Part shown: positions 36,038 through 39,675 of the stretch, piece by piece
Layout: each line of letters begins with the position of its first letter
Position numbering within the stretch: the stretch's first letter is position 1
From: Botryllus schlosseri
Lineage: Eukaryota
DNA: 64,000 nucleotides
Assembly (NCBI GenBank): GCA_051294905.1
Contig: CM119383.1
Location: forward strand, 5,146,001-5,210,000
Direction: 5' to 3'
Translations under genes and position numbers: made by a program
The notes under the pieces: generated by a model
The model's database searches: none
What the model saw: the letters and a program-made list of their open reading frames with translations, nothing else
What the model was told of the DNA's origin: nothing

Positions 36038-36287
36038 TCATTTTTCCTCACTAATCTTCCCTTCCACCCCGAACAGTATTGAAAACATTTCCCGGCTTTG
36101 ATGATCAGCTAGATAAGCGGCAAACTGTCCGAGATCCATGTGATAGTCTCTGCCACCGTGGACACCAAAGTTTTTTTCGGACACAGGTTCGCAAAACTTT
36201 TTAACAAAAGAACCGCTTCCGTCTGGTTTGAAAACACCATCCTCCCGGTGAACGAGGGATAATCTCTTCCAAGTTTGACGCCTCATC
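36038..36287 (-). CDS. RWDD2B: RWDD2 alternative duplicated last coding exon (isoform B, 294 aa when joined to the three shared exons)
   Basis: Acceptor ttattctgtttag|G in the same phase (2) as exon A. Intact frame RMRRQTWKRLSLVHRED..GRDYHMDLGQF..ILFGVEGKISEEK*, collinear with exon A. Confidence 0.8.
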
Positions 36288-36836
36288 CTAAACAGAATAA
36301 ATTACATAACATCATCTGGATGATTGCAAATGAAACATGTGTATGTGCAGAAGAGCGTGTGTGTCATTTCACCTCTTCATATCAAGTCAGTGGTTGGTGT
36401 GGGAATTACAATGCGTTGTATTTTGAAATTTAAAAAGCATTACGAGTATTTCGATAGATTTATATGCCTCTACGTGTGAAATTGTTACAACTACCTAACC
36501 TGGTGATGCAGCCGCTCAATCATGGTAACAACAAATTTTCTCAAAAATCACACCAGTGTGTGCATGATTTTGAACGTATTCACTGATTTAACAAACTTCT
36601 GTAACACCCTGTGCCAATCTAATTCTGCCAATCTAATTCGTCAAACTATTTGAGTAGTTTTGAGACCCTTTGCGTTCTACCATTATTTGAAATGGCATGG
36701 CTTCAAAATTGCAAATTCTACTTAAAAATTGATTTGTCCTTCATATATCTTGCCTCAACTTAGACTTAATAACATAGCGTACACACATCTCGTTAAAATT
36801 TCATAACCTCGTCACTAGATCATTACATCCTTACCC

Positions 36837-39675
36837 TTATTTCTCGGGTAATCTACCTTCCACTCCGAACAAATGGAAGAAAATGTGCCCGCATTCATGT
36901 TCCTTCATGTACTTGTAAAGCGACCCCATGCTCATGTGATTTCCTCGATTTCCGCTCACTTCAAAACTCGCTTCTTCCATCCCGTCAAAGTTTCTTTCTT
37001 GTCTCCCTCCTAACATCTCTCTATGACGGACTTCAATATGCTTCCAGTTGAGCCTCTTAATCCTGGCAAAGATAACCAAATACTCTTCACTGACGCACAA
37101 AAAGAGCAAAAGTAAAGAACGCTATCAAAAACCACTGCGCTGCATAATTAGGCAGTACTGATTCTACGTGATGTAGATGTGGCATTTAGATGATCTTCAT
37201 AGATGCTGAAGATAATACAGACATTCCTGCTTTAATTTGATGTCAAATTCTGCATTCTGCTGCCACATGTTACGGCGTTAGCTGTAATTCCAAATAGGTT
37301 TGGATCAAATATGTTTAAAGAGTATGACCTTAACTTCAGCCACCCAAAATAATGATGAGTCAGACGAATTTTTTTTACCCAAAAAACGGAAGATGTTGAC
37401 CTAAAAAATTAAAATTTAAACATTTTTTTACCTTAAAAACTTGATTTTGACAAAATTTTGACCTCATGTATGTAAATTAAGTGTTTTCGCACGCGTTAGA
37501 ATTAAACTACTTATCTTCATTTCTGGTTGGTCTGTCCTTACAAAAAAATATTTTTACTCAACAACTGACAAATTTTTACATGAAAAAACTTTATTTTAAC
37601 GAAATCTGAACCTATGAAGAATTCCAGTAGTTACATCAAGCATTATGGTAGAAATAATTAAAATTTGTTGTATTACGACGTAAGATACGTTCCTACATTG
37701 TCGGGTAGAAAGCGTCCGTCCTTACCAAGTGCCTTGCCAGGAATGGAGAAAGAACTTAAAAAATATTGACTACTTTTTGACATTTTAAGATGTAAAAAAA
37801 ATGAAACACGGGACATATATTTATAATCTAATATTCGATTGACATTTCAACTTTGGATAATAATCGGGTCATCAAGACGGTCTACTAACCTCAGCCAAAA
37901 TTCCTCGCAACTTTTACACGGTCCCTCGACGCACACAACTCCCGGTTTTCCCGGCATGCTGAACCCTGTCAGATTCAATTCCTTTGACCATTCCAGAATA
38001 TTTTTCCGTTTGACTTTGTTATAAATGTGATGGCTGTAGATCCATATGCGCGAAAAGTCTTGAGGCGTGTCGGCGTTTGCTTCCTCTTTGTCGAGACAAG
38101 TCTGACCAGCGTCTGCGGTGACGAAGTTCTGGCCGTTTTCATTAACCCACTCAACCACCTGGTAATACAGATGATATGTGCTGATTACATCTTTCAAATC
38201 ATACCAAAATAAGTTGTGTATAGGATAGGGCTGTAGTGACTAACTTGACTTGAGTCATTTTCTTTGAAATGGAAAATAACTCAACTTGAGTCACTTTGTG
38301 TATTGACTCGATTTGGACTCGAGTCATTGCGCATGAATTGACCAACTCATATGACTCGACACTCGAACGGCCAACACAGGTATTTCTTCTAAGAATAGTA
38401 AAGTTATTATTGGTTATTGGTATTTTGCCTGGTAGAATTATTACGGTAGTATAGGGCCAGAAGCTGTGTGGGAAATTACTACCTTATATTATGGATGCAA
38501 GGCATGCGATATAACGTAAGCAGAGTTGCAAAACTCGAAACTGAAAACGATGACTTGACTCAGACCCGAGTCTCAACACTATGACATTTTAACGAGATGT
38601 GTGTACGCTATGTTATTAAGTCTAAGTTGAGGCAAGATATATTAAGGACAAATCAATTTTTAAGTAGAATTTGCAATTTTCAAACCCTGGCATAGGATAT
38701 GTTGCTAATATGCCACATTCATTCCCTCACAGATCTGTATGATACAAACTCGGAAATAGCAAATTCCACACATCTCCAATACCTTATATTGCTCCGTTCA
38801 TCACAAGTATTGGAATATTGTGACACATAAGTCCACAATAATGTCATCTGGTATTTGAAACACATTTCAGAACAGGTGTAAAGTGTATGCGAGTAATAAT
38901 GGTGATTCAGGGTAGAACTATCATTTGTTTCTCATCATTTTTTTTTAACTTTAAACAGGGAATCCATGATAATGACTCAATATTGCATACAACCATTGTT
39001 TTCCCTTCTAGGGATTTTCCTTATAAAATCAATTTAATTGAATAATTCATATTCATATTGAAATAAACCCGAACTAGTGAAGATTTGAAAAGAAAGTTGC
39101 TGACAATTACCCTTGACGAGTGTCAGCGGAGAATATTTGGGTATATTTCATTATGATTATATTATTCGCTAGTATCTATATTGAAGTTCTGTACCTCCAA
39201 GAAGCTCTTTAAAATCATGTAGTTACCTGAAAAATCTGAGGATCGCCAACTTGCAGTTCTTCAATGAAATCTTTCAAGGCTTCATTGATGCTTGAATACT
39301 GCGATTTACTCAAGTTTGGGGATCTTTATGCAAAGGAAATATTCTATTTAGTGCCAAATGCAATGGAAAATATGAATGGTTGAAAATTTGAACAGTTATA
39401 ACTTACCTGATTAATGCTGATATTCGCTCTTGCGATGGGTAGTTCAAGCCCAGGGTAAATTCTACATCGAAAGTGCAATCCGGTTCTTGTAGCCTCAATT
39501 TCACAGTGAATATAAGAATTCGGAAAGGGTCTCCACCATCGTCCTCGACGAATTTTCGTAGCTCGCTGAATACCAGAAGATCATCCATCACGATGTCACT
39601 CTCGTCAGGATACATACTACGCAGCATTTCCAGTTCTGATAACTGCGTTTCCACGTCCACAACCCGAGAAGACAT
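36837..39675 (-). CDS. RWDD2B: RWD domain-containing protein 2, isoform A, 286 aa. Exons 39675-39407, 39323-39227, 38158-37890, 37062-36837
   Basis: N-terminal [18 protein letters not shown] motifs; [49 protein letters not shown]; last exon [24 protein letters not shown]. Junctions are GT-AG and in phase. The RWDD2B vs RWDD2A assignment is from memory. Confidence 0.9.
38226..38575. mobile_element. Partial family 1 hAT-like element
   Basis: tagggctgtagtgact start; GACTCGAGTC motifs; no matching second end. Confidence 0.6.
39040..39210. repeat. Inverted pair of Penelope-like terminal repeat fragments (minus about 39040-39075, plus about 39096-39210)
   Basis: attcatattgaaataaacccgaa (reverse) followed by gttgctgacaattacccttgacgagtgtcagc...gaagttctgtacctcc (forward). 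Confidence 0.65.

What the first reader, a model, noticed from the sequence alone, without database searches (positions are those of the whole stretch)
36038..37062. RWDD2 carries two duplicated, diverged last coding exons that appear to mirror vertebrate RWDD2B and RWDD2A
Seen: one gene body (three exons) is followed by two intact homologous exons. Both have strong acceptors in the same phase 2: A (37062-36837; [39 protein letters not shown]) and B (36287-36038; R-MRRQTWKRLSLVHRED..GRDYHMDLGQFAAYL..FSILFGVEG). They have diverged strongly, yet neither has a frameshift or premature stop, which implies long-term selection on both. Recalled knowledge: human RWDD2B ends ..RGNHMDFGQLYQFL..MFFGVEG and RWDD2A ends ..RNDYHMNLGQFLEFL..ILFGIES. 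Exon A shares the 2B-type RGNHM/LY signature; exon B shares the 2A-type DYHM.LGQF/ILFG signature. Inference: an ancestral single RWDD2 made two C-termini by mutually exclusive splicing, and the vertebrate duplicates later each kept one isoform.
Basis: partly seen in the sequence, partly recalled or inferred. Interest (0 to 1): 0.85.

Follow-up and report, generated by a model that had tools for sequence, protein, structure and literature searches.

The report
Ascidian RWDD2 alternative C-terminal exon pair
A sea-squirt gene of unknown function makes two versions of its last protein domain by including or skipping one of two duplicated exons; the arrangement is real and old within sea squirts, but it is not the forerunner of the vertebrate RWDD2A/RWDD2B gene pair.

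Summary
On the minus strand, three common exons of an RWD + Prp3_C (RWDD2-type) gene are followed by two homologous phase-2 exons, A and B. RNA contigs and reads join e3 to A, e3 to B, and also A to B. So A is a cassette exon whose stop codon lies 2 nt before its own donor. Including A gives the A-type C-terminus, with B as 3'UTR. Skipping A gives the B-type C-terminus.

The same A-then-B pair is present in Styela clava, Clavelina lepadiformis and an unnamed assembly. It is absent from Ciona (intronless), amphioxus, sea urchin, scallop and sea anemone.

The evolutionary reading is mostly not supported.
- Amphioxus already has a separate RWDD2A-type gene, so the 2A/2B split predates the tunicate-vertebrate split.
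- The intron that precedes A/B is shared only by ascidians and vertebrate RWDD2B.
- An AU test rejects B + 2A as a clade (p 0.036).
- The "DYHMDLGQF" signature is also the sea-urchin state.
- The A-2B resemblance rests on about five alignment columns; without them the opposite pairing is favoured.

Whether A is orthologous to the RWDD2B last exon remains open. I rate this a new member of a known kind, of moderate-to-low interest.

The parts
39407..39675 (-). coding exon 1 (ATG 39675-39673; RWD domain, first part); ends in phase 2
   Evidence: ORF and Pfam RWD hit. The joint 39407->39323 is seen in RNA contigs of X1 and X2 and in 8 raw reads of X19.
39227..39323 (-). coding exon 2 (97 nt)
   Evidence: RNA joints 39407/39323 and 39225/38156 (cut +2). 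The frame is restored only with the acceptor at 39323.
37890..38158 (-). coding exon 3 (start of the Prp3_C/DUF1115 domain, profile positions 2-52); ends in phase 2 with donor GAG|GTTAGT
   Evidence: Pfam PF06544 hit, E 9.9e-13. Two alternative joints leave from 37890.
36835..37062 (-). exon A: a cassette exon that encodes the 74-aa A-type C-terminus. Stop TAA lies at 36839-36837, 2 nt before its own donor (GT at 36834-36833).
   Evidence: Joints e3->A and A->B: one contig each in X1 and X2, and 4 raw reads each in X19. Orthologous exons exist in Styela, Clavelina and L010/L011.
36038..36287 (-). exon B coding part: 82-aa B-type C-terminus, stop TGA at 36040-36038. It is untranslated when A is included.
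   Evidence: Joint e3->B, contig depth 36.6 in X1 and 26.2 in X2. Orthologues found.
35800..36037 (-). shared 3'UTR (approximate end; AATAAA motifs near 36005-36000 and 35812-35807)
   Evidence: Read depth continues to about 35720-35880 in X19 and to 35959 in X1 contigs. Sequence.

Best explanation
The window comes from an ascidian (nearest named relative: Styela clava). It carries the ascidian orthologue of RWDD2B, a protein with an N-terminal RWD domain and a C-terminal Prp3_C/DUF1115 domain.

The exon that encodes the last ~60% of the C-terminal domain was duplicated in tandem. I judge that this most likely happened in the tunicate lineage, after an intron had been gained at that position in the common ancestor of the tunicate gene and vertebrate RWDD2B.

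Splicing chooses between the two copies by a cassette mechanism. If A is included (e3-A-B), translation ends at A's stop codon, 2 nt before the A/B junction, and B is only 3'UTR. That stop is too close to the last junction to trigger EJC-dependent NMD by the usual 50-55 nt rule (inference). If A is skipped (e3-B), B is translated.

Both products are predicted to complete the same ferredoxin-like Prp3_C fold. They differ in one loop and in many surface positions, so the gene makes two variants of one domain. This presumably changes partner or ligand specificity (inferred; the biochemical role of RWDD2 is unknown).

B stays close to the ancestral sequence and A is the faster-evolving copy. The resemblance of B to RWDD2A is retained ancestral character. 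The resemblance of A to RWDD2B rests on a few columns.
For: Splicing: e3->A, e3->B and A->B joints in two RNA contig sets; e3->A and A->B also in raw reads of a third run.

Domain content: RWD and Prp3_C hits, with the Prp3_C profile spanning e3 plus A or B.

Conservation: the A-then-B pair, in the same phase, occurs in Styela L001, Clavelina L004 and L010/L011. The stop-then-donor layout is also seen in Styela. A-type and B-type clades are each monophyletic (98/91 and 99/97). The BRPF-like neighbour is conserved.

Absence elsewhere: single C-terminus and no second copy within 10 kb in amphioxus, urchin, scallop, anemone and Ciona.

Intron map: columns 168 and 293 (both phase 2) are shared only by ascidians and gar RWDD2B.

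Gene orthology: in the core-only tree, tunicates sit with vertebrate 2B (52/88, then 83/94). 2A+2B monophyly has p 0.015 and Tun+2A has p 0.006. The amphioxus 2A-like gene joins vertebrate 2A at 100/96.

Fold: AF2 models of the Clavelina A and B isoforms have pLDDT 89.9 and 89.3 and the same order of secondary-structure elements. The C-terminal domain matches the yeast Prp3 C-terminal fragment 4yhu_C, TMt 0.79.
Against: The timing of the exon duplication is not settled. On the 80-column peptide alignment, A+B as a clade costs 7-12 lnL units (AU p 0.057-0.23), whereas A+vertebrate 2B costs only 1.5-3.8 (p 0.41-0.60). In the four-cluster test the (A,2B|B,2A) split is the ML topology (RELL 0.72).

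The RNA evidence is thin in raw reads: 4 reads per A joint, and none listed for e3->B in X19. Contig depths are only rough.

In Clavelina and L010/L011 no donor follows A's stop, so the A isoform there may be made by alternative 3' splice-site use rather than by a cassette.

No functional difference between the isoforms has been tested.
Confidence: 0.6

Rival explanations
1. Older duplication within the RWDD2B lineage. The exon was duplicated in the common ancestor of tunicates and vertebrates, after the phase-2 intron was gained. Ascidians keep both copies. Vertebrate RWDD2B kept the A-type copy and lost B. RWDD2A is an older, separate paralogue and plays no part.
For: A+V2B is the least costly constraint (lnL loss 1.5-3.8, AU p 0.41-0.60). 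B+V2B is rejected (p 0.010). ((A,B,Ciona),V2B) is borderline (p 0.049). A and 2B share N at column 47 and L/Y at columns 54/55. The intron before the exon is shared by ascidians and gar 2B.
Against: The signal rests on about five columns. Without column 47 it is a tie, and without the five columns (A,2A|B,2B) is best. The same states recur in a coral (N) and in molluscs (L-Y/F), so homoplasy at these sites is demonstrated. The G of RGNHM is confined to the window species and Styela. No B-like relic was found within 10 kb of gar RWDD2B. The scenario needs one extra loss.
Confidence: 0.3
2. A single ancestral RWDD2 gene spliced A and B alternatively. After duplication in vertebrates, RWDD2B kept A and RWDD2A kept B.
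For: The topology ((A,2B),(B,2A)) is not rejected with the first taxon set (AU p 0.17). It is the best of three in the four-cluster test.
Against: Amphioxus has a bona fide 2A-type gene beside a 2B-like one, so the 2A lineage predates the tunicate-vertebrate split. Gar 2A, amphioxus 2B-like, urchin and scallop all lack the intron that the alternative choice requires. With amphioxus 2A included, B+2A is rejected (p 0.036). Mean identity of B to 2A is 40.8%, no higher than to 2B (39.8%) or to urchins (44.0%). 2A+2B monophyly is itself disfavoured (p 0.015).
Confidence: 0.03
3. Exon A is a non-productive 'poison' cassette, or annotation noise, and only the B isoform is functional.
For: A carries an in-frame stop. 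It evolves faster than B: mean within-clade identity is 47.5% against 59.1%, with a stem branch of 0.67 against 0.29. e3->B is about three times deeper than e3->A in two contig sets.
Against: A's reading frame is intact in five lineages. It ends at the position homologous to the normal protein end and keeps the family's invariant residues (W-K, HRE, HM, G, FG.EG). The AF2 model of an A isoform is as confident as that of the B isoform. In run X19 the A joints are the ones seen. The stop is 2 nt from the junction, which does not fit an NMD switch.
Confidence: 0.05
4. Exon B was captured from a neighbouring RWDD2A-type paralogue (gene fusion) and did not arise by tandem exon duplication.
For: B shares Y at column 47 and QF with 2A. 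Tunicates seem to lack a separate 2A gene among the hits.
Against: B lacks every 2A hallmark (YPNWKH, DYGLRND). B+2A is rejected. B starts at exactly the same codon position and phase as A, although 2A-type genes have no intron there. The window holds no remnant of other 2A exons.
Confidence: 0.02

Closest known systems
Vertebrate RWDD2B (C21orf6)
   Same: Same RWD + Prp3_C architecture. Two intron positions and phases (alignment columns 168 and 293) are shared only with the ascidian gene. The last exon has the same size (247 nt in gar, 247-250 nt for ascidian B). The core-region tree places tunicates with 2B.
   Different: Gar RWDD2B has a single last exon and no second homologous exon within 10 kb. 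It keeps the ancestral phase-0 intron (column 145) that ascidians lost, and it lacks the ascidian intron at column 202.
Vertebrate RWDD2A
   Same: Same domain architecture. It shares ancestral residues with exon B (D-Y-H-M-D-L-G-Q-F) and the NWKH motif with exon A.
   Different: It is a separate, older lineage with an amphioxus orthologue. In gar it has two exons and no intron before the C-terminal peptide. A clade with B is rejected.
Tandem duplicated, alternatively spliced homologous exons. Example: MARVELD3 E3a/E3b, which encode alternative C-terminal halves (Abascal et al. 2015, PMC4494069).
   Same: Two tandem homologous exons of like size and the same phase encode alternative versions of the C-terminal part of a domain. 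Both are conserved over long times.
   Different: Here the two exons are not mutually exclusive in the mRNA. The upstream copy ends in a stop and is spliced on to the downstream copy, which then serves as 3'UTR. No separation of the isoforms into paralogues is demonstrated.
Prp3 C-terminal domain (DUF1115), yeast 4yhu
   Same: Pfam PF06544 covers e3 plus A or B. The predicted fold matches 4yhu_C (TMt 0.79, rmsd 2.5 A).
   Different: Only 17% identity. RWDD2 proteins are not known spliceosome components, and RNA binding was not tested.

Membership tests
RWDD2 protein family | N-terminal RWD domain (PF05773) | tested here: met
   Exon 1 alone: E 3.5e-05, above the gathering score. Ascidian orthologues: E 1e-14 to 1e-18. 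The fold matches 2daw and 2dax.
RWDD2 protein family | C-terminal Prp3_C/DUF1115 domain (PF06544) | tested here: met
   Exon 3: E 9.9e-13. The profile is covered to position 134-137 of 138 in the A isoform of Clavelina and in gar 2A and 2B.
RWDD2B orthology group | Shared derived gene structure with vertebrate RWDD2B | tested here: met
   The introns at alignment columns 168 and 293 (both phase 2) occur only in the window gene, Styela and gar 2B.
RWDD2B orthology group | Groups with RWDD2B, not RWDD2A, in a tree of the shared core | tested here: inconclusive
   Tunicates + 2B is in the ML tree at 52/88, and at 83/94 with a tick sequence drawn in. Tun+2A is rejected (p 0.006). Tun+V2B without the 'unk' rows has p 0.051.
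Mutually exclusive homologous exons (tandem duplicated exon substitution) | Tandem homologous exons of the same phase and similar length | tested here: met
   Exon A is 228 nt and the coding part of exon B is 250 nt. Both are phase 2, 35% identical, with a cross-match E of 2e-9.
Mutually exclusive homologous exons (tandem duplicated exon substitution) | Exactly one of the two exons is present in each mature mRNA | tested here: not met
   The A->B joint is seen in contigs of X1 and X2 and in 4 raw reads of X19. A-containing mRNAs therefore also carry B, as 3'UTR. The exclusivity holds only at the protein level.
Splice-isoform separation after gene duplication (Abascal et al. 2015) | The alternative exon pair predates the gene duplication | tested here: not met
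   The 2A lineage is already separate in amphioxus. Outgroup genes and gar 2A lack the intron and a second exon.
Splice-isoform separation after gene duplication (Abascal et al. 2015) | Each paralogue's exon falls in the orthology group of a different alternative exon | tested here: not met
   B+2A is rejected (AU p 0.036). A+2B is only not rejected (p 0.41-0.60). The exon tree leaves the four groups unresolved.

The most novel reading that the evidence does not exclude
The A/B exon duplication predates the tunicate-vertebrate split within the RWDD2B lineage. On this reading ascidians preserve an ancestral alternative-splicing event of the common ancestor of tunicates and vertebrates (Olfactores). 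Vertebrate RWDD2B is then the A-only survivor, having lost the more ancestral-looking B exon.
Probability: 0.3. Interest if true: 0.45.

Novelty: new member of a known kind. Interest (0 to 1): 0.33.

Why it matters
RWDD2 proteins have no known function in any animal. [quoted passage not shown]

The case also shows a less usual way to obtain protein-level mutual exclusivity: a cassette exon that ends in a stop just before its donor, so that both isoforms share one 3'UTR and polyadenylation site.

For the scan, it is a caution. Matching short remembered signatures between exons and paralogues can pick out ancestral or convergent residues. Here the attractive model of an ancestral isoform pair partitioned between paralogues fails, because amphioxus already has a separate RWDD2A.

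Tried and rejected
1. I suspected that bird RWDD2A 'isoform X3' (78% coverage) revealed alternative last exons in vertebrates. The alignment shows that it differs at the N-terminus only.

2. From memory of human gene maps, I took RWDD2A (6q14) and RWDD2B (21q21) for ohnologues from the two rounds of vertebrate genome duplication (2R). The idea was never tested with tools, and the amphioxus 2A-like gene contradicts it, so I dropped it. A literature search for RWDD2A plus 'ohnolog' found nothing.

3. Pfam on the A and B peptides alone gave no hit. The domain is seen only with exon 3 attached.

4. The look-up of encoding contigs had no record for P0014 (Clavelina isoform X2) or for Xenopus RWDD2A.

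5. The listing of cluster members gave no organism for the 'unk' clade (P0154, P0155, P0029), P0405, P0033, P0128 or P0139.

6. Run X23 contributed no reads to the exons.

7. P0128 was left out of the second peptide tree because of its very long branch (3.3).

8. The first AU script failed on a file name, and one run timed out. Both were repeated.
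Full report
WHAT IS THERE

The finding lies in a minus-strand gene. Reading the sequence and translating the spliced exons gives three common coding exons: e1 39675-39407, e2 39323-39227 and e3 38158-37890. They end in phase 2. 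Two exons follow that both start in phase 2 after strong acceptors.
- Exon A starts at 37062, with stop TAA at 36839-36837.
- Exon B starts at 36287, with stop TGA at 36040-36038.
The products are 286 aa (A) and 294 aa (B).

Exon 1 matches the RWD domain. Exon 3 matches the first third of Prp3_C/DUF1115. In full-length orthologues the Prp3_C profile runs through the A or B peptide to position 134-137 of 138. A and B therefore encode alternative versions of the last ~60% of that domain.

A and B are 35% identical with 26 invariant columns. They cross-match at E about 2e-9. The 64-kb window holds no other copy of them or of the core exons.

TRANSCRIPTION AND SPLICING

I laid two sets of RNA contigs (X1, X2) and two raw RNA-seq runs (X19, X23) on 35400-40200. 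Every intron is confirmed by GT..AG joints. Three joints concern the finding.
- e3->A (37889/37061): contig depth 12.3 in X1 and 8.3 in X2; 4 raw reads in X19.
- e3->B (37889/36286): contig depth 36.6 in X1 and 26.2 in X2; none listed in X19.
- A->B (36834/36286): contig depth 12.3 in X1 and 12.7 in X2; 4 raw reads in X19.

The third joint changes the anatomy. A is not a terminal exon. After its stop come GG and then the donor GTAAGG, so A is a 228-nt cassette exon (37062-36835) spliced on to B.
- Including A gives the A-type protein, and B becomes 3'UTR.
- Skipping A gives the B-type protein.
- Both mRNAs share one 3' end, near 35800.

The stop is 2 nt from the last exon junction. By the usual 50-55 nt rule the A mRNA should escape EJC-dependent NMD; this is inference from vertebrate knowledge. 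B does not belong to another gene: it is joined to e3 and to A, and no other core exons exist nearby. X23 gave no exonic reads. The raw-read counts are small.

WHOSE GENE, AND HOW WIDESPREAD IS THE PAIR

A profile of A+B searched against 1.84 billion representative proteins found 149 relatives. The closest full-length relative led to named tunicate proteins from Styela clava, Clavelina lepadiformis, Phallusia mammillata and Ciona. The core tree places the window gene next to Styela inside an ascidian clade (96/91). As in Styela and Clavelina, a BRPF-like gene lies tail-to-tail downstream, at window 27744-34683.

Genomic loci show the same A-then-B pair, in phase 2, in three other assemblies.
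- Styela: A 12467-12697, B 13178-13423. Here again a stop is followed by AAG|GTAATT.
- Clavelina: A 11055-11285, B 11384-11629.
- An unnamed ENA assembly (L010/L011).
In the latter two no donor follows the stop. There the A isoform may arise by use of the upstream acceptor alone.

NCBI already lists A- and B-type isoforms for Clavelina (P0014, P0151). A fifth A-type sequence (P0405) comes from a metatranscriptome. Among the 149 representatives only tunicate sequences fall in the A clade.

The pair is absent from all other loci examined.
- Ciona has an intronless gene with a single B-like end.
- Amphioxus (2B-like gene), Strongylocentrotus and Pecten have two-exon genes with one C-terminus and no second copy within 10 kb.
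- Actinia is intronless.

GENE STRUCTURE

Exact exon models mapped on a protein alignment give four intron positions.
- Column 145 (phase 0): shared by gar RWDD2A, gar RWDD2B, amphioxus, urchin and scallop.
- Columns 168 and 293 (both phase 2): shared only by gar RWDD2B, Styela and the window gene.
- Column 202 (phase 0): found only in the ascidians.

Column 293 is the intron that precedes A/B. The gar 2B last exon is 247 nt, the same as Styela B. RWDD2A has the ancestral two-exon structure and no intron at the place where the alternative choice is made.

TESTING THE MIRROR CLAIM

On the 80-column peptide alignment, A, B, vertebrate 2A and vertebrate 2B are each strongly monophyletic. Their mutual order is unresolved.

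AU tests with the first taxon set gave these results.
- A+2B is the cheapest constraint (p 0.41-0.60).
- A+B is borderline to acceptable (p 0.057-0.23).
- ((A,B),(2A,2B)) is rejected (p 0.013).
- B+2B is rejected (p 0.010).
With only the four clusters, (A,2B|B,2A) is the ML split, but not significantly so (RELL 0.72; alternatives p 0.088 and 0.32).

Site likelihoods show where this preference comes from. Column 47 (N in A and 2B, Y in B and 2A) gives 5.6 of the 7.8 lnL units. Columns 44, 54 and 55 give most of the rest.
- Without column 47 the test is a tie.
- Without columns 44, 46, 47, 54 and 55 the opposite pairing (A,2A|B,2B) is best.

The state table shows further problems with the signature.
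- Y or F at column 47 is the urchin, mollusc and amphioxus state. Urchins read RDYHMDLGQF exactly.
- N also occurs in a coral.
- L-Y/F also occurs in molluscs.
- The G of RGNHM occurs only in the A exons of the window species and Styela. The other A exons read RNNHM or RDNHM.
- A contrary signature exists: NWKH in A and 2A, against TWKR in B and 2B.

Mean identities agree with this. B is 40.8% identical to 2A, 39.8% to 2B and 44.0% to urchins. A is 43.9% identical to 2B, 36.1% to 2A and 44.7% to cnidarians.

THE DECISIVE POINT

A search started from an unnamed 2A-like protein returned a Branchiostoma lanceolatum protein named RWDD2A-like (P0408). It comes from a different chromosome-scale record than the 2B-like gene (P0401/P0025). 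It carries all the 2A hallmarks: HHIYRQEL, YPNWKHISCKH and HGDYGLRNDYHMDLG. It joins vertebrate 2A at 100/96 in the peptide tree, and also in the core-only tree (81/85 and 88/40).

So the 2A and 2B lineages were already separate before amphioxus, tunicates and vertebrates diverged. A tunicate gene cannot then be the undivided ancestor of the vertebrate pair.

With this taxon added, B (+ its sister rows) + 2A is rejected (AU p 0.036). A+2B (p 0.44) and A+B+Ciona (p 0.10) both remain possible.

The core tree independently disfavours 2A+2B monophyly (p 0.015) and Tun+2A (p 0.006), and it puts tunicates with 2B.

The tunicate gene is therefore best read as an RWDD2B orthologue. B's likeness to 2A is shared ancestral character.

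WHEN WAS THE EXON DUPLICATED

Two readings remain.
- The simpler one needs one duplication and no loss. It places the event in the tunicate lineage. A is then the fast-evolving copy (stem 0.67 against 0.29 for B), and a few residues converged on 2B.
- The other places it in the common ancestor of tunicates and vertebrates, within the 2B lineage. Vertebrates then kept A and lost B.
The likelihoods lean slightly to the second and parsimony to the first. The demonstrated homoplasy of the key columns also favours the first. I give about 0.6 and 0.3. No B-like relic was found near gar RWDD2B, but none would be expected after so long.

HOW IT LIKELY WORKS

AlphaFold2 models of the Clavelina A and B isoforms are equally confident (pLDDT 89.9 and 89.3). 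They have the same order of elements. The alternative exon begins at the end of the helix at 208-219. It supplies a strand (227-234), a loop of variable length (the Clavelina A peptide is 5 aa shorter than its B peptide; in the window species the difference is 8 aa) and the two C-terminal helices.

The N-terminal half matches the solved RWD domains of human RWDD2A and 2B (2daw, 2dax). The C-terminal half matches the yeast Prp3 C-terminal fragment (4yhu_C, TMt 0.79) and ferredoxin-like folds. No solved structure covers the RWDD2 C-terminal domain.

The splice choice thus swaps the back half of one folded domain while keeping its core residues. What this changes is unknown, because RWDD2 proteins are uncharacterised. 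The literature found mentions them only in lists and association studies.

COMPARISON AND NOVELTY

Tandem duplicated, alternatively spliced homologous exons are a known class. Partition of such exons between paralogues is documented in eleven cases, including MARVELD3, whose two exons also encode alternative C-terminal halves (PMC4494069).

The present case belongs to the class at the protein level. It fails the strict criterion of mutual exclusion in the mRNA, and it fails both criteria for isoform separation between paralogues.

It is a new member of a known kind, and it is partly visible already in automatic annotations of Clavelina and Styela. Interest is moderate to low. It would be somewhat higher if the older-duplication reading proved true.

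Noticed in passing
window 36692-36805 and 38580-38693: A 114-nt inverted repeat pair, 95% complementary. One arm lies about 30 nt downstream of exon A's donor and the other in intron 2, so the arms bracket exon 3 plus exon A. The window holds only these two copies. It could be two copies of a small mobile element, or a pre-mRNA pairing that affects the splicing of e3 and A. No e2->B or back-splice joint was listed.
   Followed up: partly
window 39049-39263, 38298-38458 and 37493-37653 (introns of the gene): Intronic stretches with very high RNA contig depth (up to about 4800, against about 20 for the exons). There are many loose ends and 'opposite strands' joints at 39049/39177. These look like dispersed repeats, probably foldback or transposon-derived, that are transcribed elsewhere in the genome.
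   Followed up: no
window 27744-34683 (+): A BRPF/BRD1-like gene (EPL1, PHD, bromodomain and PWWP in the Styela and Clavelina orthologues) lies tail-to-tail with the RWDD2 gene. The same neighbour is found in Styela clava and Clavelina lepadiformis.
   Followed up: partly
L003:10001-10888 (Ciona intestinalis): Ciona's RWDD2 gene is intronless, with a single B-like/ancestral C-terminus and no A copy within 10 kb. This fits replacement by, or intron loss through, a cDNA of the A-skipped isoform.
   Followed up: partly
P0408 versus P0401/P0025 (Branchiostoma lanceolatum); P0033, P0128, P0139 (unnamed): Amphioxus has both a 2A-type and a 2B-like RWDD2 gene. Further 2A-type proteins come from unnamed assemblies and marine metatranscriptomes. 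No 2A-type protein from a tunicate appeared among the hits, which suggests tunicates lost 2A.
   Followed up: partly
P0154, P0155, P0029, P0004, P0022 (unnamed, JGI/ENA): A clade of B-like RWDD2 proteins from unidentified organisms is sister to the ascidian clade in the core tree (97/97). They may come from non-ascidian tunicates. Whether they also have an A exon is unknown.
   Followed up: no
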